Shown in pieces: positions 3,515-62,282 of a stretch of 64,000 bases of DNA. The translations under genes and the position numbers were made by a program. This stretch comes from Styela clava (lineage: Eukaryota), in assembly GCF_964204865.1 (NCBI RefSeq), contig NC_135254.1:14322001-14386000 (forward strand). The letters run 5' to 3'. Position 1 is the first letter of the stretch. Every line of letters starts with the position of its first letter. The notes beneath the pieces were generated by a model that was not told where the DNA came from, did not search any database, and saw only the letters and a list, made by a program, of their open reading frames with translations.

Positions 3515-5729
3515 TTATGTCTTGCCAGCTTGTTTCCGAAGGAGAATGTAGATTTTTTCTTTGATCCACTCTTTGTTGAATGGTGCGTATGTCTGGGTAG
3601 ATTTTTGAAATACTAGGCAACAGAGATCAGCAAGTTCATCGATGAAATCAAACAGTTGACTGATGTCGTAAGTAATTGAAGGGCAATTGGGATTGATTCG
3701 CTTGAGATGTTCTTCATAGATCTTGCACACACCTAGAAATGTAAAATTATTTCAAAATAAAAATATTTTTGGAAAAACACATGCTAACATATTAGTACTA
3801 TGTGATTGATATTTTCAATCTGTTTTATGTGAGTGAAATACACGCATACAAAAATGGACAGGTAACTGAAGTGTAGATTTCCAGCGTAATGCTTTCACCT
3901 TTGATATTGAGTAATTAATTTTATATTCTCACATTTATCCTGTGTTAACAGTAAACACATATCAGTATATAGTAACAAACCATATTTAAACGAACAAGTT
4001 TTTAATTTGAATTTTGGGTTAAATCTAGTTCAATTATAATAATTTTCCCATTATAAGCTGATATGAAAAAGTTATCTATATATTTTACAATTTATTCATC
4101 AAGGACATGCTATGAAAAATTAAAATGAATTCACATATTTGACCAGACATTTGGTTCAATAAAACAAACTCTATTTGTCTCTGGGAAGAGATCGTCTGGC
4201 ATAACTGTAGTATGTAACTGTAGATGTGTCAGATCGCGCCATGCCTGTCTCAATAATACTTTTAAACCATAGCGACGTGCGCCGGCCAGCGTATGACCAA
4301 AATTGCAGTATTGTACTAAAAACTCTCAATTGCTATTTTTTTTTTTGGAGGTTATATTATTTTTTCTAAGGAAGGAATCCAATGGTGTAATTTTTTTGGT
4401 CTGCGCTTTCTATTCGTTCACTGCACAGTGGCTGTTCGTGCCAAAATGAAAGCCCAGACAGTCTAGTAAAAGAGGGGTTTGCACTCACTGGTATAATTGA
4501 TGTCTTTTAATGTGGGGGCTATTCTCGACCGTCATACTGGTTTTTTTTTTTTAAATTAAATTCTCTTCTTAAAACATTAGTTTCCTAGATGTTTTGTCCT
4601 TTCTTGATGTATCGCTGTGTTTTTTTATTTAAATATCAATGTTCATTATATATGAACATTATAAAGACGAGAAACAATTATTACAATTCTTAAGTACTGG
4701 TATTTAGGCATAAAATTGATATGGCGTTCTGGAAATTGTCGAAATGCACCGGAAACTATTTTTGAGATTTCTAATACTGATAGGCCTACTTAATTCAAAG
4801 CATGAAACCATCAAGCACCATTTTCAGAAAATATTTGCTGTCTTATATGAATTATAAGCACAGTAGTTCGTATTGTATTCTGATCTGTGACTCCTGGACA
4901 TCAATTGGACTTTGTATTGGGGCATTTATATAGGATAGGATTTACATATTTATCCCGGGGGGGGGGGGGGGAGGAAAGCCGATAAGATGGCTTATCAATA
5001 TGGCGAACCACGGCCTCTCGTCCGGTTACCATTCCAAGTCGGGTATGGGATTAGTTTTATTGTTTGTTTTCGGAAGCATGGACTTGGTGGTGGAGGAAGC
5101 CGTAACCGACCAGCGGTTACGTGAACCACCCAACGACGGCGAGGAGTCCAGCAATCCTCTCGCACATAACCATCTCTGCATGGGATTCGAACCTGCGAAC
5201 CCACGCAGAGTAATTAGAGGTGCGGTGGTGAGCGTATTCCTAACGCTTAGCCCGTTGAGCCACACCGCCGCGCAATTTGGGGCATTTATATTGGGGTCTC
5301 GTGTAGTTCCATACCTAACGTAGTTATGGCGTAGTCAGATGGCAGTTAGGATTGACATATCGAAAAATTGTTACCGGTATGCTACGCTCACTAGAAGTAT
5401 GTTAGGTACGGTAGTACCGGTACGAAACTACATGAGACCCTTATACCGGTATTGTTGGTAGTCATGGTTTTTAAGCATATTAGCATTCAATAAACAGACA
5501 CAATACAATAAAACAATTGATAATAACGACTCGTTACGAATTATTGAAACTGACAATGTATGCAGGTCACATTACGGTACCGTACCACATTCAGACATTA
5601 TGTACTGATATGATATGTACTGATATTAGGATACTCACCCTCCATGCATTCATTCACCGATTCGTAGTCTGAATATGTCCGCCCCTCAGGCTTTTTCGTT
5701 GGCTGAACAAGAAGTATTGTGTGAGACAT
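3515..5729 (-). CDS. ERH: Enhancer of rudimentary homolog. Exons 5729-5639 and 3732-3515, 102 aa
   Basis: [31 protein letters not shown]|[36 protein letters not shown] is near-identical to ERH. Phase-1 GT-AG intron. Confidence 0.97.
4170..4530. mobile_element. Truncated copy of the TcMar-like element at 17669-18983
   Basis: Shares both CTATTTGT...CGTCTGGCA...TCAGATCGC and GGTTTGCACTCACTG...GATGTCTTTTAATGTGGGGGC with the 17.7-19.0 kb copy. Confidence 0.65.
4932..5276 (-). mobile_element. Full-length tRNA-derived SINE with 15-bp target-site duplication
   Basis: A box TGGCTCAACGGG, B box GGTTCGAATCC and (ATCCT)n tail. TSD TTGGGGCATTTATAT at 4917-4931 and 5277-5291. Many copies in the window. 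Confidence 0.92.
5294..5440. mobile_element. Short PIF/Harbinger-like MITE, same family as 33779-34213
   Basis: Inverted ends GGGTCTCGTGTAGTT ... AACTACATGAGACCC, with TTG/TTA flanks. Confidence 0.7.
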
Positions 5730-23353: not shown

Positions 23354-26300
23354 ATGTTTTACAAATCTTGGCTTCTAAATATCTGTAATCATAGATTTAC
23401 ATGCAAAACTTATCAACGATGTCGTAGATTTTCTATTTCATCTCACCTCTGGAATGTCCGTGTTAGATTTGCACCCTCACCAACAGGTTTCTTTATTTTT
23501 AATTGATTTAATATGAACATTACAGTAGATGAATGATGTTTTAGTGATGTTGTGGGTGACTGGAGAGGCAAAAGCTATCGAAAAAATATATGATTATGGT
23601 GGCATATTATCTATTAATAAATAACCAACCAAGTCGAGACTTAGCCTGGCGGTGGGCGCCTCGTAGCATGCATTAGGATTATGATTGCCGTTGCAACTTT
23701 GAGCCCTGTGCAGGTTTGCAATTTCGATCCCTATGTGGTATAATTATGTGAGAGAGGATTGCTTGACTCCGTAGGGTGGTTCACATGACCGCTGGTCAAT
23801 TCAATGCATCTGAAACAAAAAATAGTTGCCATTAAGCCATCGGCTTTCCTCTTCTCGAGATTAATATGAAAATCCTATCCCACTCAATATTGTATATATA
23901 AATTGTATATCAATATTGTATTATATAAATAATTATTATTCAGGTTTTCTGCATATCGGTGGACTGAGAACTGCTTTACTCAATTACTTATTTGTGAAAT
24001 CCCAAAAAGGTGAATATTTCTTAGCAATATCTTAATGATTCACCATGTTGTAAATACTAAATAGTAATACTATTTATCACTGAACTAATTGTAAATCATA
24101 TCTTTAACATTTTTCTAGGTGGTGGTCAGTTTATCATCAGGATTGAAGATACTGATCAATCAAGAATTGTGCCTGGTGTCGTAGAAAATTTATTAAATCA
24201 ATTAAAATGGGCTGGAATAACACCAGATGAAGGACCAGGAATTGGGGGAGACTTCGGACCTTATGTACAAAGTGAAAGATTGGATATATATGAAAAGTAT
24301 GTTATGCTAAGCTGAACATTTACTTTAATTGGCGACTACTGTGCTTCAAACAAATTATAATATTTTGATTCATAACAATGCACAATTTCCAGACCGGTTT
24401 ACCAGTCTTTCAAAAGTTTTGTTGAAAATGATTTGGTTTTCCATCTTCAAATGCATTCATTGCCCATGACATGTTTATGAGGAATTTCATGAATATGAAA
24501 TTTTCCCTATATCGGTCTTCATCTATAGTCAAGTTATATAGAAAATATCTTAGTAAATAATTACTATGTAACAGTTTTCATAATTGAAATTTTCTAATCT
24601 TTTCTTTCCAACATTCAGGTACGCAAATCAACTTTTAGACAATGGAATTGCGTATAAATGTTTTTGCAGTGAAAGAAGATTGGAGATATTGAGAAGGGAT
24701 CAAATGCAGAGAAAAGAACGTAGTCGGTAGTTGTATATTTATTTTAACATTAAATGTAATGGTATATAGCAGGGGTGGCCAACCTGCTTTTGACTGCGAT
24801 CGACTATAATCTTCAAAATAGCTGGCGATCGACTGATCGGTAATTAGGTCATAAACAATAAGGAATGAATACTGGATACACAGATAACTGCACACACGCA
24901 TACAAAAATTTCACCACTGCCATTAAGCTTGGCTCTGCGGCCGCATTCTCAATGAAATTGTCACAAAAATTTGCATTTTTTGTATTCCATTCAATTTGAT
25001 TATGTAATTGAACCCGGAGTAAATGTTTCATCATATTTTTTAAATTTATTCAAATCATACAATTCTGATCTAGGGCCTGTCTAATTTTTAGTCGTAAGTG
25101 TTTCCATTCCCCTCAAAAAAACCTTGAAAAGTACCCATGTATTATGTAAACAGCAAATATTGAATATTCTAAAATCATAAATATTACATGATTGCTCAAA
25201 CTTGAGTGTGAGTGTCTAATTTCAAGTCCGATTCTTTGCTCACTTGGAATTAGAAAAAAAATGGGCATTCTGATGCCCCTGCTACCGTTGCAAATAAAAA
25301 TTTATCACACTACTTTTGGATTGAGGCAATAACTTTCGCACAGTGCAGAAATTGTTGTAGGATTGTTTGTCAGTCAAGTACTGACAAACAGTGCATGTAC
25401 AGTACTGTATTATTCAGGCGTTTTTTTTTAACTGTTTTTTTTTCGGGGGGTATGTTATTATTAAATTTACTCAACATCAGACGCGATCGACTACTCGAGA
25501 CGTGGCGATCGACGTGTTGGCCACCCCTGGCATATGGGTATAAACACACTTTTATGCTGTTCAACTTTTTAAGGATTTTTTCATGGCATAATATTTTTTG
25601 ACTTTTCAGATATGACAACAGGTGTAGAAATTTGTCAGAATCCGAGATTGAAGAAAAGCTAGATCTTGGAATGCCTTATGTCTTGCGTCTGAAGCTTCAG
25701 AATGATATTAGATCTTTTGAGGATATATTAAATGGTGAGATAAAGCACGATGTTGCCAGTATTGAAGGGGATCCTGTAATATACAAATCAGACAGGTAAT
25801 TTGTTTACATTTAGTGAAACCTTACTGATATCAGGATGGGATAGGATAGCATTTAGTCCAGCAATCCTCTCACACATAACTATCCTTGCATGGGATTCGA
25901 GCAAACCCACGCAGGGTAATCAGAGGGGCAGTAGTGAGCGTATTCCCATCGTTCAGCACGATGCATCGGCAGGCCATATTACTTATTTGATCTGGAGTCC
26001 GAGAAAAGTGATTTAATGTGCTAGGCCCCAGAATCTTTCTGGTTTGGCATTGCAAACCCAATAAATTGCACACTGAGTAAGGTGGGCGGCACAGGGTTGT
26101 AACCTACGATGGATGCCATTACAAGGTGACCCATTCACATTTAGGTATCCAACATATCATCTGGCAAACATTGTTGATGATCATTTGATGAAAATAACCC
26201 ATGTATTACGGGGCCAAGAATGGATGATGTCAACTGTGAAACATGTAATGCTATATGAAGCATTCGGTTGGAAACCACCACAATATGCACATCTTCCATT

Positions 26301-34213: not shown

Positions 34214-34780
34214 ACATAAGATAACATGAGCAGCTGCAAATTCCTTTCCAGTACTAGGAATTCAGCCCAAGAATCACATTTAAATGCACTTGCTAGTATA
34301 TATTTAGTTCACATGATTCCGTGATTTCTGAGTCTTTGTGGAATGAAACTACTGTAACCTGATAACTTTTTCAGTTACACGGAGTTGAACCATGGAGGGA
34401 ATTTCATTATACTAGTTGGTAAAACCAATGAACGAATCAAATTTGATTTTTTTTATATATAAACCTTAATCAGGACTAGACTAGAAACATAGATCTAGAT
34501 TCTTTTAATTTATGATCATTTTATTAATTTTTCCAGCCCTCTATAACGCATTGTGCAAACATTGGCCTTCATTCACGTATACATGTTGCTTCTTGAGCAT
34601 TATTTGCCAAACAAAGCACTCAAATAACATTGCTAAACTAGCAAGAACTGTTTTTGAATTATTCAATGTTTTGGGCCAATGGGCATGCACCATCACAGTT
34701 GAAACACGAAGAACATTCTGCTCGATCTGGTGTATTAAAGGAAGAAATATTAACATACTTTAGTATTGCTGTATTGCAAG

Positions 34781-35277
34781 TAGGGCTGGGCGTTTCGAAA
34801 CAATGTTTCGAAACGTTTCGAAACACTGATATGTCGAAACGGCGGCGTTTCGACCTTCGAAACGGATATTATGACGTCATAGCAAATGCAACCTGTAATT
34901 AGTGACCAATTCGAATTTAATATCCGAATTTATTCGAATATCGTGACTCTCAAATATCGTTTTCAGTGTTTATAAGAATATTAAATATCGCGCAAACGTC
35001 CAAGCGCCGCCGTCCACGTTTTGATCTGGCCGCTGCTTTGTCATTGAGCAGAAACATTCGTGGAATTATCATTATCGTTTTATCTTTCGAATTAGCATCC
35101 AGTGATATCCTTTTGTGGATTTAATTGTGGAAAATAGATGTCATTATACATTAAATTCCATGGGTAATAATGGTATCATATTTCACTGTTTATAACAAAC
35201 GTGTGTTTCGTTTCGTTTCGAAGGCAAAATTTCGTTTCGATTTCGAAACACCAGTGTTTCGAAAATGCCCAGCCCTA
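34781..35277. mobile_element. Young hAT MITE
   Basis: TIR TAGGGCTGGGC, perfect 8-bp TSD ATTGCAAG (34773-34780 and 35278-35285), subterminal TTTCGAAA repeats. Confidence 0.92.
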
Positions 35278-35629
35278 ATTGCAAGCGAGCATCTTGCGCT
35301 GATTACATATTCAGACCAATGATATTCAAAATATTACTCTTAACTATATATTGGTTTTATTTCGACTCTATAATCAGCACAGACGTTGAAATAATTAATA
35401 AAAATAATTAAACAATGATTATGAAATCCAGGCCCCTCACTAATGTAAAAATGTGAGATTTATGAAAAACACCTTGCCATGTGCCGCAGAGTGCGATCAC
35501 CACGTTGTAAGTACATTGGGTTCGCCAACTCTGATATCGCTATTCAGCAGTGGATTTCATCAATGAACGGCAACTGTGGGCAAAAAAATATTCGATTTGT
35601 TTAGTGACTAGCATGATCCAGTCTAGGTA

Positions 35630-35900
35630 AGAGATAACACGCCGCGGGGAGATAAAAGTTTACACCTCGTGTGCCCAGAGGCTCGAGACGCAAAAGCTCA
35701 AATACGTCACAGCGATATGGATTTTTTCTTTCGCGCGTCGTTCTTTATCTTTCTTTATTACGTCAGGAACTAGACAGGAAAAAAGGTCGTCGTCACGTGA
35801 ACCAGCAAACCAACCAATCAGCATTGGTTATTTTACAACGGCGATAAACGACATTCTGTTGTTTCGACGCCCTTCTTTGAGGTGTCCTCGTGGCGACTGT
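35630..35900 (+). promoter_or_regulatory. CpG-rich promoter of the CENP-B-HTH gene, possibly shared with GORAB
   Basis: CRE-like TACGTCA (near 35703 and 35759), E-box GTCACGTGA (near 35792) and paired CCAAT/ATTGG (about 35815-35827). Confidence 0.55.
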
Positions 35901-35970
35901 ATTCTGGATTTAGGAATTGTAAATATTTCATTAGAAAAGTTTGAGGCGAGTGTATATCTATATATCTGTT

Positions 35971-37527
35971 ATGTCTAGAACAAAGTTGGTGAAGTTAGGG
36001 CCTCAGCGGTCTCAATTAAACTGCCGAAACCGCAGGCAAGCGAAAGTGCAGAATACTAAAAAGCGTAAGAAGCGCATAGTGGTTCCGTGTAAGGGCGCCA
36101 CATGGGAAAACCTGAATCCCGAAAAGATGATTGTTATACGAGAAGAAGATAAAAAATATTTCGGTAAAGAATGGGTCGAATTTTATTACATTTTTGATAT
36201 TTGAATATTTTATTAATGTATTATTGTCTGATCTTGCTGTTTTGTTGACTGGTTCAGTACAGCAGTATTTCCAATCTTCCAGCAATACTGCTTATGTAAT
36301 ATTTTGAATTCTAATGCTGGCATATATGACTTCATTCATGAAATAGGACTTCTGTCGTGATATGTTCTCTTATCATTTGCTCTTTCATCCTTAATCCTAT
36401 TGCATGCTTTTTGCAATGATAATTCCAAGACATAATATACGAACCGTCAGACAGTGGTTTAATCAAATTGTTCTAAATGCAATTGCCATATTTTTTAAAA
36501 TTATTTACTTTCTCCTATCGTCCTAAATTGTATATTTTGTTCTGTTTCTCTATGCATAACAGGTTTAAGTGGGATTGGTTTTAGACCAACTGGTTATATT
36601 GATATTGATTATGAAGTGGCTAAATATCACCAGAAGCTTGTATGCTCTGGAAGTAGAGTCAATGCTGCTATACTTAGTAATAAGGCTGTGGAACTGTGTT
36701 TAAAAGCGGGTTTGCCACTGACTTTGTATAATGCAACGTCAGGATGGATACAGTATTTCCTAAAAAGATGTGCTTGTGTTAGAGCACATTTGCAGCAGTT
36801 ACGGTCAAATGAGGCCTCATTCACTGAAGACGAAGAAACTGTCCAGACACTAGAAACCCCGCTTTGTAAATGCTCCAAACCTAATATTGTAAGTAAAAAT
36901 GTCTATTTTGTGGGATGTCCAATCGTGTTCCCATATTCTAATAATAATCTCTTCATTTTTAGGTTCCGCAACAGCCTGCATCACTTCTCAATCTTTTTGC
37001 AACACCTGCTTCTCCAGAGGTGGGTACCAGATCGAAAACTACCGCATAACATTTTTTTTATTTTTATTATATTTAAAATATAACTCTTGTTCTAGCCTAC
37101 ACGCTGCCGGAATTGTTCCAACGACGATCTGTCATCAGACTCCGGAGTGTCTTCCATGTCTACCTCAACCACTGGTGCAAGTTTTACAGATGCTGCTGCT
37201 TCATCAGTTGAATGTGCCAAATTATTCATTCCAGAAAGTGAAGTCAAATTATATCCGGATGATTGTGGATTAGTTCGCACAGACACAGCAGTTTTTCGTA
37301 ATCCACGGACAAGATTACATAATATTCCACGCACTGACTCTTTTGGGCCAAAAAGGCTTCGTTATGATTATTTTTTACCAGAGTACTGTTTTCCAGAACT
37401 GTTGCCCTCCGGGGAAGTGAAAAATTTTGTTGAAAATTTTAATCAATCATCCATTGATCAAAACTATGACGTTGATAATGAATCATATTCTAATTTATTT
37501 GATTTGTTACAAAGTGAATTTTCATGA
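35971..37527 (+). CDS. Uncharacterised CENP-B/Tc5-type HTH protein, 335 aa. Exons 35971-36163, 36563-36888, 36963-37019, 37096-37527
   Basis: Three GT-AG introns (phases 1, 0, 0) give one open 1008-nt frame. RPTGYIDIDYEVAKY...VNAAILSNKAVEL...YNATSGWIQYFLKR fits the pogo/CENP-B HTH pattern. Confidence 0.8.
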
Positions 37528-38555
37528 CATTTATTGTTTACATTTACTTCGGATTTTATTGTTTCACTGTGATTATATTTACTTTGCCAAGTGCTTTCAC
37601 ATTTGTCTATTTAGTTTGAAGAAAGTGTGGTTGGTTTGTGGGAAAGCAATCACCATTTATGGAAATATTGGATGAGAGTTTGAATAACAAATTTTTTGTT
37701 ATTAGGTCCGTAATACTTTTACACTAAGTAAATATGTAGAAGTTATGCAACATTCAACATGAATAGAGACGAACAGGGTAGACTTTGACTGCAGGACAAA
37801 CTTGTTCCATTTGGTGACAATTTGGTATCGTTTAGTCATTTACATGCTCATTTTTTATATCCATGGGTTAGCCGTTACGCTATTGAGAGGGCTGTAAACA
37901 AGCCCAAACTAGTAAGTTTATTACAGCGTTAGCAAAAAACTGAAATCTGGTAAAGGCTTTTTTTTTTTTTTTGCCAAATTTAAATCCATAGCCAAATCGG
38001 ATTTATGAAAATGATAGTTTTGGTTTATCCAAATATATTATTATGTCAATTTAATTGCATGAATCCCAATTTCCAAATAATTTAGGTGTTATGTATACAA
38101 TACATGATAGATAAATGATCACAAATATCAAATAATCCAGATACATTTACCCATATTAGTTCAAATATCCAATTTGAATTGTGTCCACATTCATGAAATG
38201 TAATCCAGTGACCATTGTGCATACATTTTTTTTCAGTAGTTATACCATATATATTATAAATTTAACCGATATTATCATTTAATATGGAAAACAAAAATAA
38301 TTAAAGAATTAGACAAATAATCATAAAAACGCCCATCATGCTATTAGGCGTTTTCCAGATTCTCGGTCCATGCAAACTTTTTTTTTTTTTTTTCTTGGAA
38401 ATAACATTTTATTAGAGAGTCTGTGATTGCAGAAACGATAGTTGCAGGTGTTAGGAAAAAATATTAAAACATGTTTGACATGAAATAATACATTATACAC
38501 CCACAATGTTATATGATATATCATAATTTTCATTACAACCCAACAAACATACACA

Positions 38556-39018
38556 TTTTTTTTTTTTTGACTGAATTATTTCAATGTATATAAATTTCAG
38601 ATAAGTATGAAAACTATAACTACCATATTCAAAGCATTACTGATTTTCCTAAAAGAATTTCATCTTATAATATTTCCTCTTTTACAAATTCATTCATAAT
38701 TCTTAAAGATCCTATCATCACACATTTAAACATAGTTCTAAGTATGGACTGATATGTTTCCGATTCTTGAAATATTAAGCCATTTCTAAAATTCCAAATC
38801 GCTGCTTTACCACAAGCGATAATTAGATTCAGTGATTTAGTTTCAACATCTTGAGTAAAAATATTATGCTGTGTATAACTTGTTAAATTTAGCCATTTCC
38901 AAAAGGATTTTATATAAGAACAGTTGAAAAATAAATGAATACAATTTTCAATGACTCTATTACAAAAGACGCAATTGCCATTTGGTAAAGGCTTAAGTAA
39001 AAAAACGATTTGAAGCAT
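38556..39018 (-). mobile_element. 5'-truncated L1/Tx1-type LINE fragment (ORF2 C-terminus plus poly(A))
   Basis: zf-RVT motif CVFC...E...HLFFNC...FW and IWNFRN. A13 tail on the minus strand at about 38556-38568. Confidence 0.8.
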
Positions 39019-46500: not shown

Positions 46501-49500
46501 GTTAAAGAAGCTAAATTTATTTAGTGAAGAATTATGAACCTCTTGTGATAAATTATGAAGAAATGTTTTCGCTTCTTCATTCCCGGAAAGTCTAATTCCA
46601 TAATTGACTTCAGCTGATACAGACTTTCTTTCCTTTTCAATTTGAACCTATATATTGAAAAAATAAATTTTCTATATCTTTGTATAAACATGACCAGAAT
46701 CGAATTCAAGCTGGCCTGAGCTGTGTAGACAGAGTTTAGCATGTTTACACTTGAGCCTGTGTCAAATTTCAAACTCGCCAGAATTGGCATCCAAGGAATT
46801 CCCTAGCAGACTTTCAGAGGTGATAACTGAAAAAACATCCCACTAAAACTTAATAATCATTTTTTTTCAACTACGTTTTCTTAACAGTCTAGCAACGAAA
46901 GTTTGCATACACCAAAGGTTTTGTTATCAAAATTTTATTTTCTCAGACTTCAAAGTTGGAAAGTATTTGAGTTGAATTACTGAGAAATTTCAGTGAACAT
47001 ATACTACTGTTATATTACAGTTTAGATTGTGGACAATCATTTTTTAGTAGTGACCAAATTATTTATACTTCTTTCTTGTCGATTCCACAACTCATATCAT
47101 GCAGTTTTTGTCCGGTTTTGCCACCAAATTCTTTTTGAAGATCAATTATTGGATGATTCTGTAAATCACCACATGTTGATAGACCCATGTCCTGAAGTCT
47201 TGAAGCTAAAAGGAACGAAGGGGTTAAAACAGGAGTGGGCAAGGTTTTGGGACCAGGGGCCAAAAAATTTTCTCACCTAGACTGGCGGGCCATGTAAGTG
47301 TGACTTAAAAAGTGACATTTTATGAACAATATTTACAGTGTTACAAAAGCAAAAGTGGAAAGCAGTAAGCTTCGTGCCAAAACTAAATTTAATTGCAATC
47401 TCAACCAATTCTTTGAGCTATTTTTGAGCCTAAACATCAAAATTTGGTTTTAGTTCGATCTTGGCCGCATCAGGCGGGCCAGATTGAAGTACCCAACGGG
47501 CCGGATTTGGCTCGCGTAGTTTGCCCATGTCAGGGTTAGAACAAAGAAAGCTGAGCTTTAAAGTTTATTTTGCTTCTATTTTGTTACCTGTAGATCTTCC
47601 TACACCAGGTAAATCCTTCACGGGCAAATTTTTCATAAATTCTTTTGCTTCACATTGGGTGACGACAAACTGCCCATCCGGTTTTGCTCGTCGAGTAGCC
47701 ATCCTAGCTAATGCTATATTTGGTCCCACTCCTGAATTCAAAAGTACATTTAAGAATGACCAACTCAATATTGGATGATTCAACATTTGATAACTTTGTG
47801 CACAAATTCTAAGAAAACATCCCTGAATGGTATACCAGTATAAAACTAATATGTTGACTGTGAAATAAATGAGATTATACTATAGATGTCTTGTTTTATC
47901 AGTACTTTTCACACACGGCCTAGTAGATTAAGCGCCAAGCGTTTGGAATACACTAACCCAGGCACCTAATTATCCTGTTCAGTTTCGCAGGTCCATACCT
48001 GTGTGGGAAAATTATGTGAAAGAGGATTGCTGGATTCCTTAGGGTGGTTAAAGTAACCGCTGGTCAATTACAGCTTCCTTCACTGGACTGGTAACCGGAT
48101 GAGGTAATGAGGTTCATCATATGATGACACAGTCTTATAGACTTTCCTCTCCCAGATTAAATAGGAAAAATTATACTTTTAGTGGAGAACTTGTTGAAGA
48201 AAAAAAAATTGAGTGAAAGTCTGAAAAATAGCTGCTGTAAAATTCTTATATAATACCTGTAGAAGCGTTACATTTTGTTGCTTCTTTCACATCGCTTCTA
48301 ATGAAAGATGCAACTTTCAATGGTGTCAGTCCAGTTTCTCTGACAATTTTTGTAATATCAACAAGAGCTTCATCACAACTAACAGCTTCTATATGCCGAG
48401 TGTACGTGGCAAGTGTGCTATACAGTTGATCTGATGTACGCCGATATGACTCAAAATCATATGGAATCACTCTGAATTTGAGAATTGGTATTTTCAAAAA
48501 TCAATTTGATATAAGAAGATGACAAATGAAAATAATAATCCCACAATGCATACTGGCACCTAAAATCCTATTTAACTACATTTAAGCTAAAAAAAACATG
48601 CTTGCCGTATGCATGATTACAAGCAAACTAAGTAACAGTGGACTAGCAGAAAATAAAAATATACATTTTTAAAATAATGCTCATTTGAAGCTTTTGCTCT
48701 GAACAAGGCGTGAAGAGGCTGTGAAGAGGTTGACTAGTATTTACGGAGCCCCACAATAAATTTATAAAAATATAAACAAAAAAACAACACATTGTTACTA
48801 AGAGATTGATGACCCTGAGTAAACTAAAATTACTCAATTTAATGACTCTGATGTATTTTCTGCTTTGTATTTAAAAACTGTTAAGTCTAGTGTTTTAACC
48901 ACTAGGCCAGGGCCATCGAATCCACATATGACCTTTTAACACATGAAAGTTACATTCGAAATATTTGAGATCACAAAACTTGTTTGCAGAATCCCAGAAT
49001 ACCTAAATACTTTATTTTGCAAGGTGTACCTTAATTCTGGACAGAGTTGTTTAGCTTTACCCATGAACATTCCATTTTTCACACCAGCAGTGCGTGCTTC
49101 ATAACTACAACTCGCAATTTCTGAGGAGGAGTAACCAGGGCCAAATGATGATGGAGGTACTCTGTAAAATGGAGCATTATTGAAATTGACAGTGCTGTGG
49201 GGTCGGAGATGTATTTTCGATCTCCCCAGAGACAGGTCAAAATTTTGAATCCCCAAGAGTCGGAATTGCAGACTTTCAACGGTGATAAAATAGTAAAATT
49301 ACTTACCAAAACTCAAAAAGCATCAATTTTTTGTTTGTAAAGGGGTTCTTAATAACGTTTTAATAAAGGCTTGAATATGGCAAAGTCTTCATAATCAACA
49401 ATTGATTTTCTCAGAGTTTGGAGCTGGACAAAATAAAAATTGATTACAACCCAAATTCAGAGTCAAAACTTTTCTTAACCAGGATTGAGAGATCCAAGCT

Positions 49501-54472: not shown

Positions 54473-55267
54473 TTATTCCAACAGAACACTAACAACAATT
54501 TCCGGAGAAGACTCAATTGATTTTAAATTTTCCATCTCCGATGTATTTAACAAACCATGAGATTCCTTCATATGTTCACCTAATTCTGATTCATGAGCAA
54601 TATATACATCACAAAAAGGACAATGAAATGATATTTTGCTATTAGGTGAACATTCATTATTGTTATTTTCATGGGTGAACGTGATCCTCTTTTTATTATT
54701 TGTACCTGTTTTATTACCATGCTTGTTTCTCATATGCCTTCGTAAATTAGTTTTTCTATTTACTTTCAAATCACACAGCGGACATTGAAACGGTTTTGCA
54801 CCAGAGTGTATAAGAAAATGGCGTTCTAAATCTGTCTTCAAATTGAATGTTTTTTCACATACACTGCAACGATAGTGTACTGTTTTTAAGCCGTTTGATG
54901 ACAAACTAATATCTTTGAAAATAACCAAGGAATCTTTGCCTAACTCCATTGTCTCTTGTTTATGATTAAGAAGATTGTGCTCTCGGAATTCCTTTTTACG
55001 TTCAAATGTTATATCACATTCTTTGCATTCGAAGCCTTTGTTTTTCAATTTTTTATTTCTCACTTCATAATGTTTTTGCAGAAATTTTTTATGGCTATAC
55101 ATGCCAAATTCTGTATAATATTCATCTTTCTGCTTTTCAGTATGTTCCAACATATGACAAGCTAATTCAATAGTACTTGTAAACTTTTTTTCGCAGTCAA
55201 CACATCGTAATATTTTCAATAGACCACTGCTTTTATCTTCTAAATTTTTACCAATAGTTTTATCCAT
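54473..55267 (-). CDS. C2H2 zinc-finger protein, five fingers, intronless, 264 aa
   Basis: Five CX2CX12HX3-4H motifs, one linker SGAKPF, acceptor TCTTCCAG at about 55353. Confidence 0.88.
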   Translation of the reverse strand: MDKTIGKNLEDKSSGLLKILRCVDCEKKFTSTIELACHMLEHTEKQKDEYYTEFGMYSHKKFLQKHYEVRNKKLKNKGFECKECDITFERKKEFREHNLLNHKQETMELGKDSLVIFKDISLSSNGLKTVHYRCSVCEKTFNLKTDLERHFLIHSGAKPFQCPLCDLKVNRKTNLRRHMRNKHGNKTGTNNKKRITFTHENNNNECSPNSKISFHCPFCDVYIAHESELGEHMKESHGLLNTSEMENLKSIESSPEIVVSVLLE

Positions 55268-61290: not shown

Positions 61291-61932
61291 CCAGGTAGAA
61301 CCGATTTTTAGATATTTATCCATGTTTCTATTATATACCGGTATATCCTAATTTAATAACAGTTACATACGTAGAAGATCATTCATAAATAGGAGTTATT
61401 ATCGTGTAATTGGAAAATAATGTCGCAGGGGGAGATTGAATTGCATTTAACGTTATGTCTGTACTACCGGTACAGGTATGTCTCGATTAAAGTTTGGGCA
61501 ACTTTTCTGCCGGTGTCTTTTGAATACTTCATACCATCGAGGAGTTCAAAATTAATTATCCATCTTAACTGATAATGCGATATGTAATATGGTGTCCCGT
61601 TATATATGACCCCACACAAGTAACAGATGTCTCATCAATAATTTTTTAAATGGCTTTCATAAATTTACAGTTGAGTTTGATATTAATACTCTCCATGACT
61701 TCTAAATAACTTTACCTTGCTGTTATTATTGATCTATTTTTTTTCAAGTTGAACCATTACAAAACAGTTTACTGGTAATTATGAGACGTTGCTTTCCGAC
61801 CAAATGTTAAATATTTGTCCACGTCCTCAATCAAAACTTACTTCTGAAAACTAAGGCAGCACTTATCCTCTCATTTTCAGTCAATCAATAACTTTAAACA
61901 TGTTAGCCACCTTTGTACTAAACTGTCATCAG

Positions 61933-62282
61933 GCTCGGCGGTGTGGCACATCGTGCTAAGCGTTAGGAATACGCTCGCCACCGCATCTCTGGTTACTCTT
62001 TGTGGGTTCGAATCCCATGCGGGGATGATCATGTGCGAGAGGATTGCTGTCATGTCCGAAAGGATTGCTGGACTCCTCACGCCGTAGGGTGGTTCACGGT
62101 CACGCTGGTAGATTACGGCTTCCTTGACCATCAAGTCCATGCTTCCGAAAACAAATAACTGGCTAACTAATCCCATACCCGACCTGGACTGGTAACCGGA
62201 TGAGGGGCCTTGGTTTGCCATATGATTAAGCTATCTTATGGGCTTACTTCTCCCCCAGGATAAAATGTAAATCCTATCCTAT
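61933..62282 (+). mobile_element. Full-length SINE copy
   Basis: Head GGCGGTGTGGC, B box GGTTCGAATCC, tail ATCCTATCCTAT and a small internal duplication of AGGATTGCTG. Confidence 0.92.

What the first reader, a model, noticed from the sequence alone, without database searches (positions are those of the whole stretch)
35971..37527. Hidden four-exon gene: a pogo/CENP-B DNA-binding domain rebuilt as a candidate lineage-specific transcription factor
Seen: four exons with canonical GT-AG sites splice into one 335-aa frame that the ORF track shows only as unrelated pieces. Layout: basic N-terminus (KKRKKR), one HTH (RPTGYIDIDYEVAKYHQKLVCSGSRVNAAILSNKAVELCLKAGLPLTLYNATSGWIQYFLKR), an S/T/P-rich linker containing DSGVSS, a second basic patch PKRLR and an acidic-hydrophobic tail (DNESYSNLFDLLQSEFS). 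No DDE domain and no enclosing TIRs are visible. Known: the KA...ASxGW..F.KR pattern defines the Tc5/pogo/CENP-B HTH, DSGxxS is the SCF-betaTrCP phosphodegron, and CENP-B, JRK and TIGD are domesticated pogo transposases that mostly keep a DDE fold. Inference: a domesticated HTH coupled to an activation tail and degron, i.e. a short-lived regulator that may bind pogo-derived MITE ends.
Basis: partly seen in the sequence, partly recalled or inferred. Interest (0 to 1): 0.78.

Follow-up and report, generated by a model that had tools for sequence, protein, structure and literature searches.

The report
Single-copy pogo-type HTH gene, already annotated
This is a real, expressed four-exon gene of the sea squirt Styela clava whose only recognisable part is one DNA-binding helix-turn-helix of the kind found in pogo transposases and CENP-B; it is already in the public annotation as an uncharacterised protein, and it is an ordinary example of a transposase DNA-binding domain kept as a host gene.

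Summary
Four exons on the + strand (35971-36163, 36563-36888, 36963-37019, 37096-37527) join in frame to 335 aa. Contigs of three RNA-like runs from three studies skip the predicted GT..AG introns. The DNA run does not.

The gene is not hidden. A public 335-aa protein, XP_039269352.2 "uncharacterized protein LOC120344284 [Styela clava]", contains exon 2 at 100% identity at residues 66-173.

Exon 2 carries one pogo/CENP-B-type HTH:
- PF03221 scores 21.3 bits against a cut-off of 22.2.
- Profile-profile probability is 97.2%.
- The best fold match is CENP-B domain 2, Z 7.9.

No DDE domain, first HTH or enclosing TIRs were found, and the locus is single copy. Resident pogo copies are only distantly alike. 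One relative is known, an unnamed 154-aa fragment at 44% identity.

The coding sequence varies less than intron 1 and the 3'UTR.

The degron, activation tail and MITE-binding ideas remain untested. Verdict: a new member of a known kind, a DNA-binding-only pogo domesticate. Interest is modest.

The parts
35794..35827 (+). Promoter-proximal motifs: CACGTG at 35794, CCAAT at 35814 and ATTGG at 35823. They lie 30-60 nt upstream of where the transcript contigs begin.
   Evidence: Motif positions come and the contig starts (35855-35868). Function is inferred only.
35855..35970 (+). 5' untranslated part of exon 1. It holds no upstream ATG.
   Evidence: Contigs of X6, X1 and X3 start at 35855, 35858 and 35868. 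There are 0 ATG in 35855-35970. Contigs cannot fix a true start.
35971..36163 (+). Exon 1 coding part: 64 codons plus 1 base. It is strongly basic (19 K/R in aa 1-65) and includes KKRKKR at aa 30-35.
   Evidence: No Pfam hit at E <= 10. No likeness to the CENP-B_N first HTH (hhalign probability 0.1%).
36164..36562 (+). Intron 1, 399 nt, GT..AG. It is retained in some contigs, and retention would stop the frame after 77 aa.
   Evidence: The skip is seen in X1 and X3. Retained forms are seen in X1, X3 and X6.
36563..36888 (+). Exon 2. It encodes the only recognisable domain.
   Evidence: A public 335-aa protein matches it at 100% at residues 66-173.
36601..36771 (+). Tc5/pogo/CENP-B-type helix-turn-helix (aa 78-134 of the 335-aa protein). 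It corresponds to the second HTH of the CENP-B DNA-binding domain.
   Evidence: PF03221 E 2.6e-4, 21.3 bits, cut-off 22.2. hhalign probability 97.2%. The model has three helices, and 1hlv_A residues 66-131 are the best match at Z 7.9.
36889..36962 (+). Intron 2, 74 nt, GT..AG.
   Evidence: Skipped in 3 of 3 RNA-like runs and 0 of 1 DNA run.
36963..37019 (+). Exon 3, 19 codons, part of the S/T/P-rich linker.
37020..37095 (+). Intron 3, 76 nt, GT..AG.
   Evidence: Skipped in 3 of 3 RNA-like runs. X1 and X6 carry a net 3 extra letters at the joint, which reads as an in-frame allele.
37096..37527 (+). Exon 4 coding part: 143 codons plus TGA. It holds the rest of the S/T/P-rich linker with DSGVSS (aa 207-212), PKRLR, and the acidic-hydrophobic tail with LFDLL (aa 326-330).
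   Evidence: No Pfam hit at E <= 10. No relative found.
37528..37947 (+). 3' untranslated region. Contigs end at 37739 (X1) or near 37942-37947 (X3, X6). No AATAAA or ATTAAA is present.
   Evidence: The true end is not fixed, because a T-run repeat after 37947 cuts the contigs.

Best explanation
This is a single-copy host gene of Styela clava (RefSeq LOC120344284). It kept only the second helix-turn-helix of a pogo-type transposase DNA-binding domain.

The transposase body, the first HTH and the element ends are gone. Three spliceosomal introns now interrupt the gene. A basic N-terminus and a long, probably disordered S/T/P-rich and acidic C-terminus surround the HTH.

The most likely working is a nuclear protein. 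The basic N-terminus would bring it into the nucleus and may add non-specific DNA contacts. The HTH would bind DNA. The C-terminal tail would recruit partners.

Shown here: gene structure, splicing, single copy, HTH family, absence of DDE and TIR, and lower variability of the coding sequence. Inferred only: nuclear location, DNA binding, regulatory output, and derivation from a transposon rather than the reverse.
For: Structure and expression:
- The exons join in frame.
- All three introns are skipped in RNA-like contigs from three studies, and none in the DNA run.
- The public 335-aa model is XP_039269352.2.

HTH family:
- PF03221 scores E 2.6e-4 on exon 2.
- The one close relative, P0002, passes the PF03221 cut-off at 27.3 bits.
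- P0002 hits this locus alone in the genome.
- hhalign of exon 2 plus P0002 against pogo HTH segments gives probability 97.2%, E 2.9e-11.
- All 9 HTH_Tnp_Tc5 repeats of P0003-P0005 align to the same part of exon 2.
- The model built with a 9-row alignment has three helices with pLDDT about 90 over residues 11-50.
- 1hlv_A (CENP-B bound to DNA) ranks first in Foldseek (probability 0.93, E 0.7).
- 1hlv_A also ranks first in VIA-align (Z 7.9, rmsd 4.0, 66 residues aligned, chain residues 66-131).
- The Atlas's best listed clusters carry PF03221 (score 0.85, a lead only).

Not an active element:
- Exon 2, exon 4 and the 2.1-kb transcript DNA each match one place in 377 Mb.
- There is no DDE hit and no enclosing TIR.
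- The 12 best resident pogo loci give at most 10 bits against exon 2.

Constraint:
- The table lists 7 variants in 1005 coding bases against 32 in 819 bases of intron 1 plus 3'UTR (Fisher p 2e-6).
- Coding variants are 3 synonymous and 4 non-synonymous, giving pN/pS 0.39.
- The one indel in the coding part is in frame.
Against: - The Pfam score is under the curated cut-off: 21.3 bits for exon 2 and 18.2 bits for the whole protein.
- PDB sequence and Foldseek E-values are not significant (0.6, 0.7). A Z of 7.9 is in the range the tool calls middling.
- The fold model was built with pogo HTH rows in its alignment, so it leans towards that fold. The single-sequence model is uninformative (pLDDT 33).
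- Only one relative is known, it is a fragment of unknown origin, and its 'ASxGW' signature is changed.
- pN/pS rests on 7 variants seen in contigs, and says 3 further differences are not shown.
- No orthologue, synteny or dN/dS test was possible.
- A single HTH without its partner may bind DNA weakly or not at all.
- Intron 1 retention, which truncates the protein before the HTH, is common in the contigs.
Confidence: 0.6

Rival explanations
1. An expressed but functionally idle relic. An old pogo fragment was caught in a transcribed, spliced locus, and its open frame persists by chance or under weak constraint. The protein would have no specific role.
For: Outside the HTH, nothing is recognisable. 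Relatives are almost absent: 5 of 1.84 billion representatives, including the protein itself. 4 of the 7 coding variants change the protein. Intron 1 is often retained, which cuts the frame at 77 aa.
Against: A 335-codon frame stays open across four exons. Coding variants are about five times rarer than in intron 1 plus 3'UTR (p 2e-6). The one coding indel is in frame. A relative from another source keeps 44% identity over the HTH and passes the Pfam cut-off. The gene is seen in 9 RNA-like runs from 3 studies.
Confidence: 0.2
2. The HTH is not used for sequence-specific transcription control. It could serve another chromatin or protein-binding task, such as binding satellite or transposon DNA for silencing or a centromere-like role, or acting as a protein-protein adaptor.
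For: Known pogo-derived host proteins have varied roles. CENP-B binds a satellite box (title of PDB entry 1hlv). The Drosophila DNA-binding-only derivatives have no settled function (PMC13548663, sections 7 and 8 read). The genome holds at least 50 PF03221 matches, so pogo-type DNA is available as a target.
Against: Nothing here tells this apart from the best explanation. The HTH is only distantly like those of the resident elements, so a shared binding site with them is not implied.
Confidence: 0.15
3. One reading: a short-lived activator with an SCF-betaTrCP degron (DSGVSS) and an acidic activation tail, binding the ends of pogo-derived MITEs.
For: DSG..S occurs once, at aa 207, and appears in only 0.66% of composition-preserving shuffles. 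The last 100 residues are net acidic (17 D/E against 10 K/R) and end in LFDLL. A MITE-like element lies about 560 nt upstream of the transcript start.
Against: Each element is a single short-motif match picked after reading the sequence. LxxLL occurs in 22% of shuffles. Conservation cannot be tested, because the one relative does not reach these parts. The upstream element was not shown to be pogo-derived, and no link to the protein was tested.
Confidence: 0.05

Closest known systems
Drosophila cag (and CG4570): transposase-derived host genes that keep only the DNA-binding module
   Same: [quoted passage not shown] The gene here likewise has an HTH only, is single copy and is spliced.
   Different: No sequence relation between cag and this gene was tested. 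cag has orthologues, synteny and dN/dS of 0.195 according to that paper, whereas this gene has one known fragmentary relative and no dN/dS. This gene shows only the second HTH.
CENP-B DNA-binding domain (PDB 1hlv)
   Same: It is the best structural match of the exon 2 model. The model's residues 1-70 lie on chain residues 66-131, the second HTH, with Z 7.9, rmsd 4.0 and 23% identity. It is also the best, though non-significant, PDB sequence match.
   Different: CENP-B has two HTH units followed by a DDE-derived body and a dimerisation end (recalled). Here the first unit is not detectable and no DDE-like part exists. The loop before the last helix is 2 residues longer, and the helix-1 tryptophan found in 7 of the 9 aligned rows is a tyrosine.
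Vertebrate pogo-derived genes (JRK, JRKL, TIGD, POGK, POGZ)
   Same: They are host genes with a Tc5/CENP-B-type HTH of pogo origin (PMC7386202: search listing, start of the abstract and three passages seen).
   Different: I did not test that. The protein here is 335 aa with no DDE hit. That paper's main text does not mention tunicates, Ciona or ascidians (0 occurrences).
Multi-repeat CENP-B_N plus HTH_Tnp_Tc5 proteins (P0003, P0004, P0005)
   Same: They are the nearest proteins after P0002 in the 1.84-billion-protein search, at 26-27% identity over the HTH. They also lack a DDE hit among the Pfam families listed.
   Different: They carry three tandem two-HTH units with strong Pfam scores (96.9-178.5 bits). 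The gene here has one weak unit.
Resident pogo-type elements of the same genome
   Same: They share the same Pfam family. There are at least 50 matches over the cut-off in the genome.
   Different: They are many copies with near-identical scores and open frames of up to 441 aa. Exon 2 scores at most 10 bits against the 12 best loci. Exons 1 and 4 find nothing there.

Membership tests
Pfam PF03221 HTH_Tnp_Tc5 (Tc5/pogo/CENP-B-type HTH) | Score at or above Pfam's gathering cut-off of 22.2 bits | tested here: inconclusive
   Exon 2 alone scores 21.3 bits (E 2.6e-4) and the whole 335-aa protein 18.2 bits. Both are just under the cut-off. The only close relative, P0002, scores 27.3 bits, which is over it.
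Pfam PF03221 HTH_Tnp_Tc5 (Tc5/pogo/CENP-B-type HTH) | Profile-level homology to bona fide pogo HTH2 domains | tested here: met
   hhalign of exon 2 plus P0002 against an alignment of 9 repeats from P0003-P0005 plus resident element copies gives probability 97.2%, E 2.9e-11, over 47 columns.
Pfam PF03221 HTH_Tnp_Tc5 (Tc5/pogo/CENP-B-type HTH) | Three-helix fold that superposes on CENP-B domain 2 | tested here: met
   The model has helices at 9-27, 34-47 and 59-83. 1hlv_A ranks first by Foldseek (probability 0.93, E 0.7) and by VIA-align (Z 7.9). Caveats: the alignment used for folding held pogo rows, and this Z is in the middling range.
Pfam PF03221 HTH_Tnp_Tc5 (Tc5/pogo/CENP-B-type HTH) | Signature residues KA...(K)ASxGW...F.(K)R | tested here: met
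In alignment A2, A106 and W126 are invariant across the 9 rows. The protein reads KAVELC...NATSGWIQYFLKR against the consensus KAxxLA...FKASNGWxxxFKxR, with 2 extra loop residues.
Autonomous pogo element | DDE_1 catalytic domain | tested here: not met
   No Pfam family other than PF03221 appears at E <= 10 on exons 1, 2 and 4 or at E <= 1 on the whole protein. Exon 4 does not match the resident element loci.
Autonomous pogo element | First HTH (CENP-B_N / psq type) ahead of the Tc5 HTH | tested here: not met
   No Pfam hit on exon 1. hhalign of exon 1 against the upstream regions of 15 pogo-type HTH2 units gives probability 0.1%.
Autonomous pogo element | Terminal inverted repeats around the coding part, and many copies | tested here: not met
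   The best inverted pair that spans the gene has 30 nt arms at 73% and is A+T-rich low-complexity sequence. There is one copy in 377 Mb by exon 2, exon 4 and transcript DNA.
Domesticated transposase-derived host gene | Fixed single-copy locus, transcribed, with host-type gene structure | tested here: met
   Single copy. Three GT..AG introns are removed in RNA-like contigs from three studies.
Domesticated transposase-derived host gene | Orthologues in syntenic position under purifying selection | not testable with these tools
The only data are within-species variants (pN/pS 0.39 from 7 variants) and one fragment at 44% identity.
SCF-betaTrCP substrates | Phosphodegron DSGxxS that is phosphorylated and controls half-life | not testable with these tools
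   The motif is present once, at aa 207-212, and occurs in 0.66% of shuffles. Conservation, phosphorylation and turnover could not be tested. The consensus is recalled knowledge.

The most novel reading that the evidence does not exclude
A transcription factor born within ascidians. One HTH of a pogo transposase lost its partner HTH and its nuclease and gained introns, a nuclear-import stretch, a turnover signal and an activation tail. It now controls host genes through sites seeded by old transposon ends, with intron 1 retention acting as an on/off switch for making the DNA-binding form.
Probability: 0.12. Interest if true: 0.55.

Novelty: new member of a known kind. Interest (0 to 1): 0.3.

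Why it matters
If the protein binds DNA and is conserved among ascidians, it would add a chordate, intron-bearing example to the short list of host genes that keep only the DNA-binding module of a pogo transposase. That pathway has been set out for Drosophila (PMC13548663). It would also show that a single HTH of the two-part CENP-B-type domain can be kept on its own. As it stands, the gene is an annotated but unstudied orphan-like gene, useful mainly as a candidate for ascidian laboratories. It does not open a long-standing question.

Tried and rejected
Searches for relatives mostly came back empty:
- The whole public protein found only itself among 1557 candidates.
- The exon 2 plus P0002 profile found only P0002 among 81 candidates.
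- Exon 4 found nothing among 8 candidates.
- A JGI metagenome scan gave 166 pattern matches, none confirmed.

These searches have length windows and word filters, so a blank is weak evidence.

Other steps that led nowhere:
- The single-sequence AlphaFold model of the whole protein was useless (pLDDT 33), so nothing can be said about the fold of the C-terminal 200 residues.
- The idea that exon 1 is a decayed first HTH came from the non-significant PDB alignment over residues 9-133. It was rejected after hhalign gave probability 0.1%.
- The idea that the gene is a recent offshoot of a resident pogo family was rejected.
- A bacterial-type promoter and terminator scan is meaningless for an animal gene and was ignored.
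- No paper in the library names LOC120344284. Searches on pogo, domestication and tunicates listed no paper on such a gene in ascidians. Supplementary files were not opened and may hold expression tables that include this gene.
- Earlier notes of this scan showed nothing near this place.

Full report
WHAT IS THERE

The window is part of contig C5 of a 377-Mb assembly. A protein identical to the product of this locus is filed under Styela clava, a solitary ascidian.

On the + strand four exons join in one frame:
- Exon 1, 35971-36163: 64 codons plus 1 base.
- Exon 2, 36563-36888: 2 bases plus 108 codons.
- Exon 3, 36963-37019: 19 codons.
- Exon 4, 37096-37527: 143 codons and TGA.

That gives 335 aa. 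The introns are 399, 74 and 76 nt, and each has GT..AG ends. Each was translated and searched on its own.

IS IT TRANSCRIBED AND SPLICED?

Thirteen runs hold the stretch. Nine runs from three studies are guessed to be RNA and hold 0.65-0.79 of its words. That share fits the exonic fraction, since the introns make up 549 of the 1901 bases queried. Four runs of one sample hold 0.96-1.00 and look like the source DNA.

I laid X1, X3 and X6 (one from each RNA-like study) and X10 (DNA) on 35000-38400.
- The intron 1 skip appears in 2 of the 3 RNA-like runs.
- The intron 2 skip appears in 3 of 3.
- The intron 3 skip appears in 3 of 3.
- None of these joints appears in the DNA run, whose single contig covers 35253-37947 with no difference.

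The RNA-like runs have no cover at 35342-35797. Their contigs begin at 35855-35868 and end at 37739 or about 37942-37947.

These are contigs, not reads. Start, end, strand and level are therefore not fixed, and 'RNA' is the tool's guess. The intron-less contigs are the real argument.

Two details are worth noting:
- Intron 1 is also present in contigs of all three RNA-like runs. Reading through it stops the frame at 77 aa, before the HTH.
- X1 and X6 carry a net three extra letters at the exon 3/4 joint. This reads as an in-frame allele, not a different splice site.

IS IT NEW AS A GENE MODEL?

No. Searching exon 2 against 1,835,955,588 representatives gave five proteins at E <= 0.001. The first is 335 aa long and matches exon 2 at 100% at its residues 66-173. 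It is XP_039269352.2, 'uncharacterized protein LOC120344284 [Styela clava]', and its sequence contains all four exon peptides. The library of papers does not mention that locus name.

WHAT IS THE DOMAIN?

Sequence and profile evidence:
- Exon 2 hits PF03221 (HTH_Tnp_Tc5) at E 2.6e-4 and 21.3 bits. That is just under the 22.2-bit cut-off.
- The second hit, P0002, is a 154-aa fragment from an unnamed Logan contig. It is 44% identical over the HTH and passes the cut-off at 27.3 bits.
- P0002 finds only this locus in the Styela genome, so it looks like an orthologue from another organism.
- The other three hits are proteins with three tandem CENP-B_N plus HTH_Tnp_Tc5 units. All nine of their Tc5 repeats align to the same part of exon 2.
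- A profile-profile comparison of exon 2 plus P0002 with those repeats and with resident element copies gives probability 97.2%.
- The alignment shows the KA...ASxGW...F.KR pattern, with two extra loop residues and a tyrosine where 7 of the 9 aligned rows have the helix-1 tryptophan.

Structural evidence:
- Folded with a nine-row alignment, exon 2 gives three helices with pLDDT near 90 over residues 11-50.
- Its best PDB match is CENP-B bound to its DNA box, by Foldseek (probability 0.93, E 0.7).
- The same entry is best by VIA-align (Z 7.9, rmsd 4.0, 66 residues, chain residues 66-131, which is the second HTH).
- These structural scores are modest, and the alignment rows bias the model. I count them as consistent, not decisive.
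- The language-model look-alikes also carry PF03221 (score 0.85, a lead only).

WHAT IS NOT THERE?

- There is no DDE domain or any other Pfam family.
- There is no first HTH. Exon 1 against the regions upstream of 15 pogo HTH2 units gives probability 0.1%.
- No inverted repeats enclose the gene.
- There is no second copy of exon 2, exon 4 or the 2.1-kb transcript DNA in the genome.
- The genome does hold at least 50 PF03221 matches over the cut-off, many with identical scores and open frames of up to 441 aa. These are resident pogo-type elements.
- Exon 2 scores at most 10 bits against the 12 best of them, and exons 1 and 4 find nothing there.

So the gene is not cargo of, nor a recent copy of, those elements.

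IS IT CONSTRAINED?

The differences listed give 7 variants in 1005 coding bases against 32 in 819 bases of intron 1 plus 3'UTR (Fisher p 2e-6). Of the seven, three are synonymous and four are not, giving pN/pS 0.39. The counts are small, they come from contigs, and the tool left three differences unlisted. Even so, they point to a coding sequence under some constraint.

HOW IT LIKELY WORKS

The first 65 residues hold 19 K/R, including KKRKKR, a run found in 0.9% of shuffles. Residues 141-235 are 35% S/T/P. The last 100 residues are net acidic.

I read the protein as nuclear. The HTH, helped by the basic N-terminus, would bind DNA, and the tail would recruit partners. This is inference.

- The degron rests on one DSG..S match, found in 0.66% of shuffles.
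- The activation tail rests on composition and on an LxxLL that 22% of shuffles also have.
- Binding to MITE ends rests on nothing tested here.

COMPARISON WITH WHAT IS KNOWN

Keeping only the DNA-binding module of a Tc1/mariner or pogo transposase as a host gene is a described pathway. In Drosophila, cag carries a pogo-derived CENP-B-type domain and CG4570 carries an HTH only (PMC13548663, abstract and sections 7 and 8 read). This gene works like those and like the CENP-B second HTH. It fails every test for an autonomous pogo element. As a member of PF03221 it sits on the threshold by Pfam's own score, but it is supported by the profile comparison and by its relative.

I file it as a new member of a known kind.

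LIMITS

- Lineage restriction, synteny and dN/dS are therefore open.
- The blanks are weak evidence because of length and word filters.
- Paper supplements were not seen.

Noticed in passing
window 34767-35291: A MITE-like element of about 525 nt lies about 560 nt upstream of the transcript start. It has 29-nt inverted ends (83% complementary) and inner TTTCGAAAC repeats. In the DNA run, summed contig depth there is 770-1680 against 16.8 for the unique flank, so it is a high-copy repeat. Its superfamily was not determined.
   Followed up: partly
window 36164-36562: Intron 1 is retained in contigs of all three RNA-like runs, alongside the spliced form in two of them. Retention ends the frame after 77 aa, before the HTH. 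It could be pre-mRNA or a regulated switch.
   Followed up: partly
window 37019/37096 joint: Contigs of X1 and X6 carry a net three extra letters at the exon 3/exon 4 joint compared with the window and X3. This is probably an in-frame one-codon allele.
   Followed up: no
window 38665-39018 (- strand): An ORF of 117 aa has a weak reverse-transcriptase zinc-binding hit (PF13966, E 3.7e-5, under the cut-off). It is a likely retrotransposon relic just downstream of the gene.
   Followed up: no
window 5000-5323 (+) and 61877-62221 (-): Two ORFs in opposite orientation are 57% identical over 96 aa (E 3e-30). A similar peptide piece lies near 25801-26016. They belong to a dispersed repeat family of unknown kind.
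   Followed up: partly
G000, e.g. L004-L013 and C3:6506929, C10:5712644, C17:1201375: There are at least 50 PF03221 matches in the genome. Ten have the same score (61.9 bits), and several have open frames of 426-441 aa. This points to one or more young pogo-type families.
   Followed up: partly
window 35794-35827: CACGTG and a CCAAT/ATTGG pair sit 30-60 nt upstream of the first transcript contig base. No TATAAA is found in 35700-35900.
   Followed up: no
window 54473-55267 (- strand): A single open frame of 264 aa has several C2H2 zinc fingers (PF00096, E 4.2e-16). It lies next to the REV1-like exons, whose IMS domain hit is at 48936-49256.
   Followed up: no
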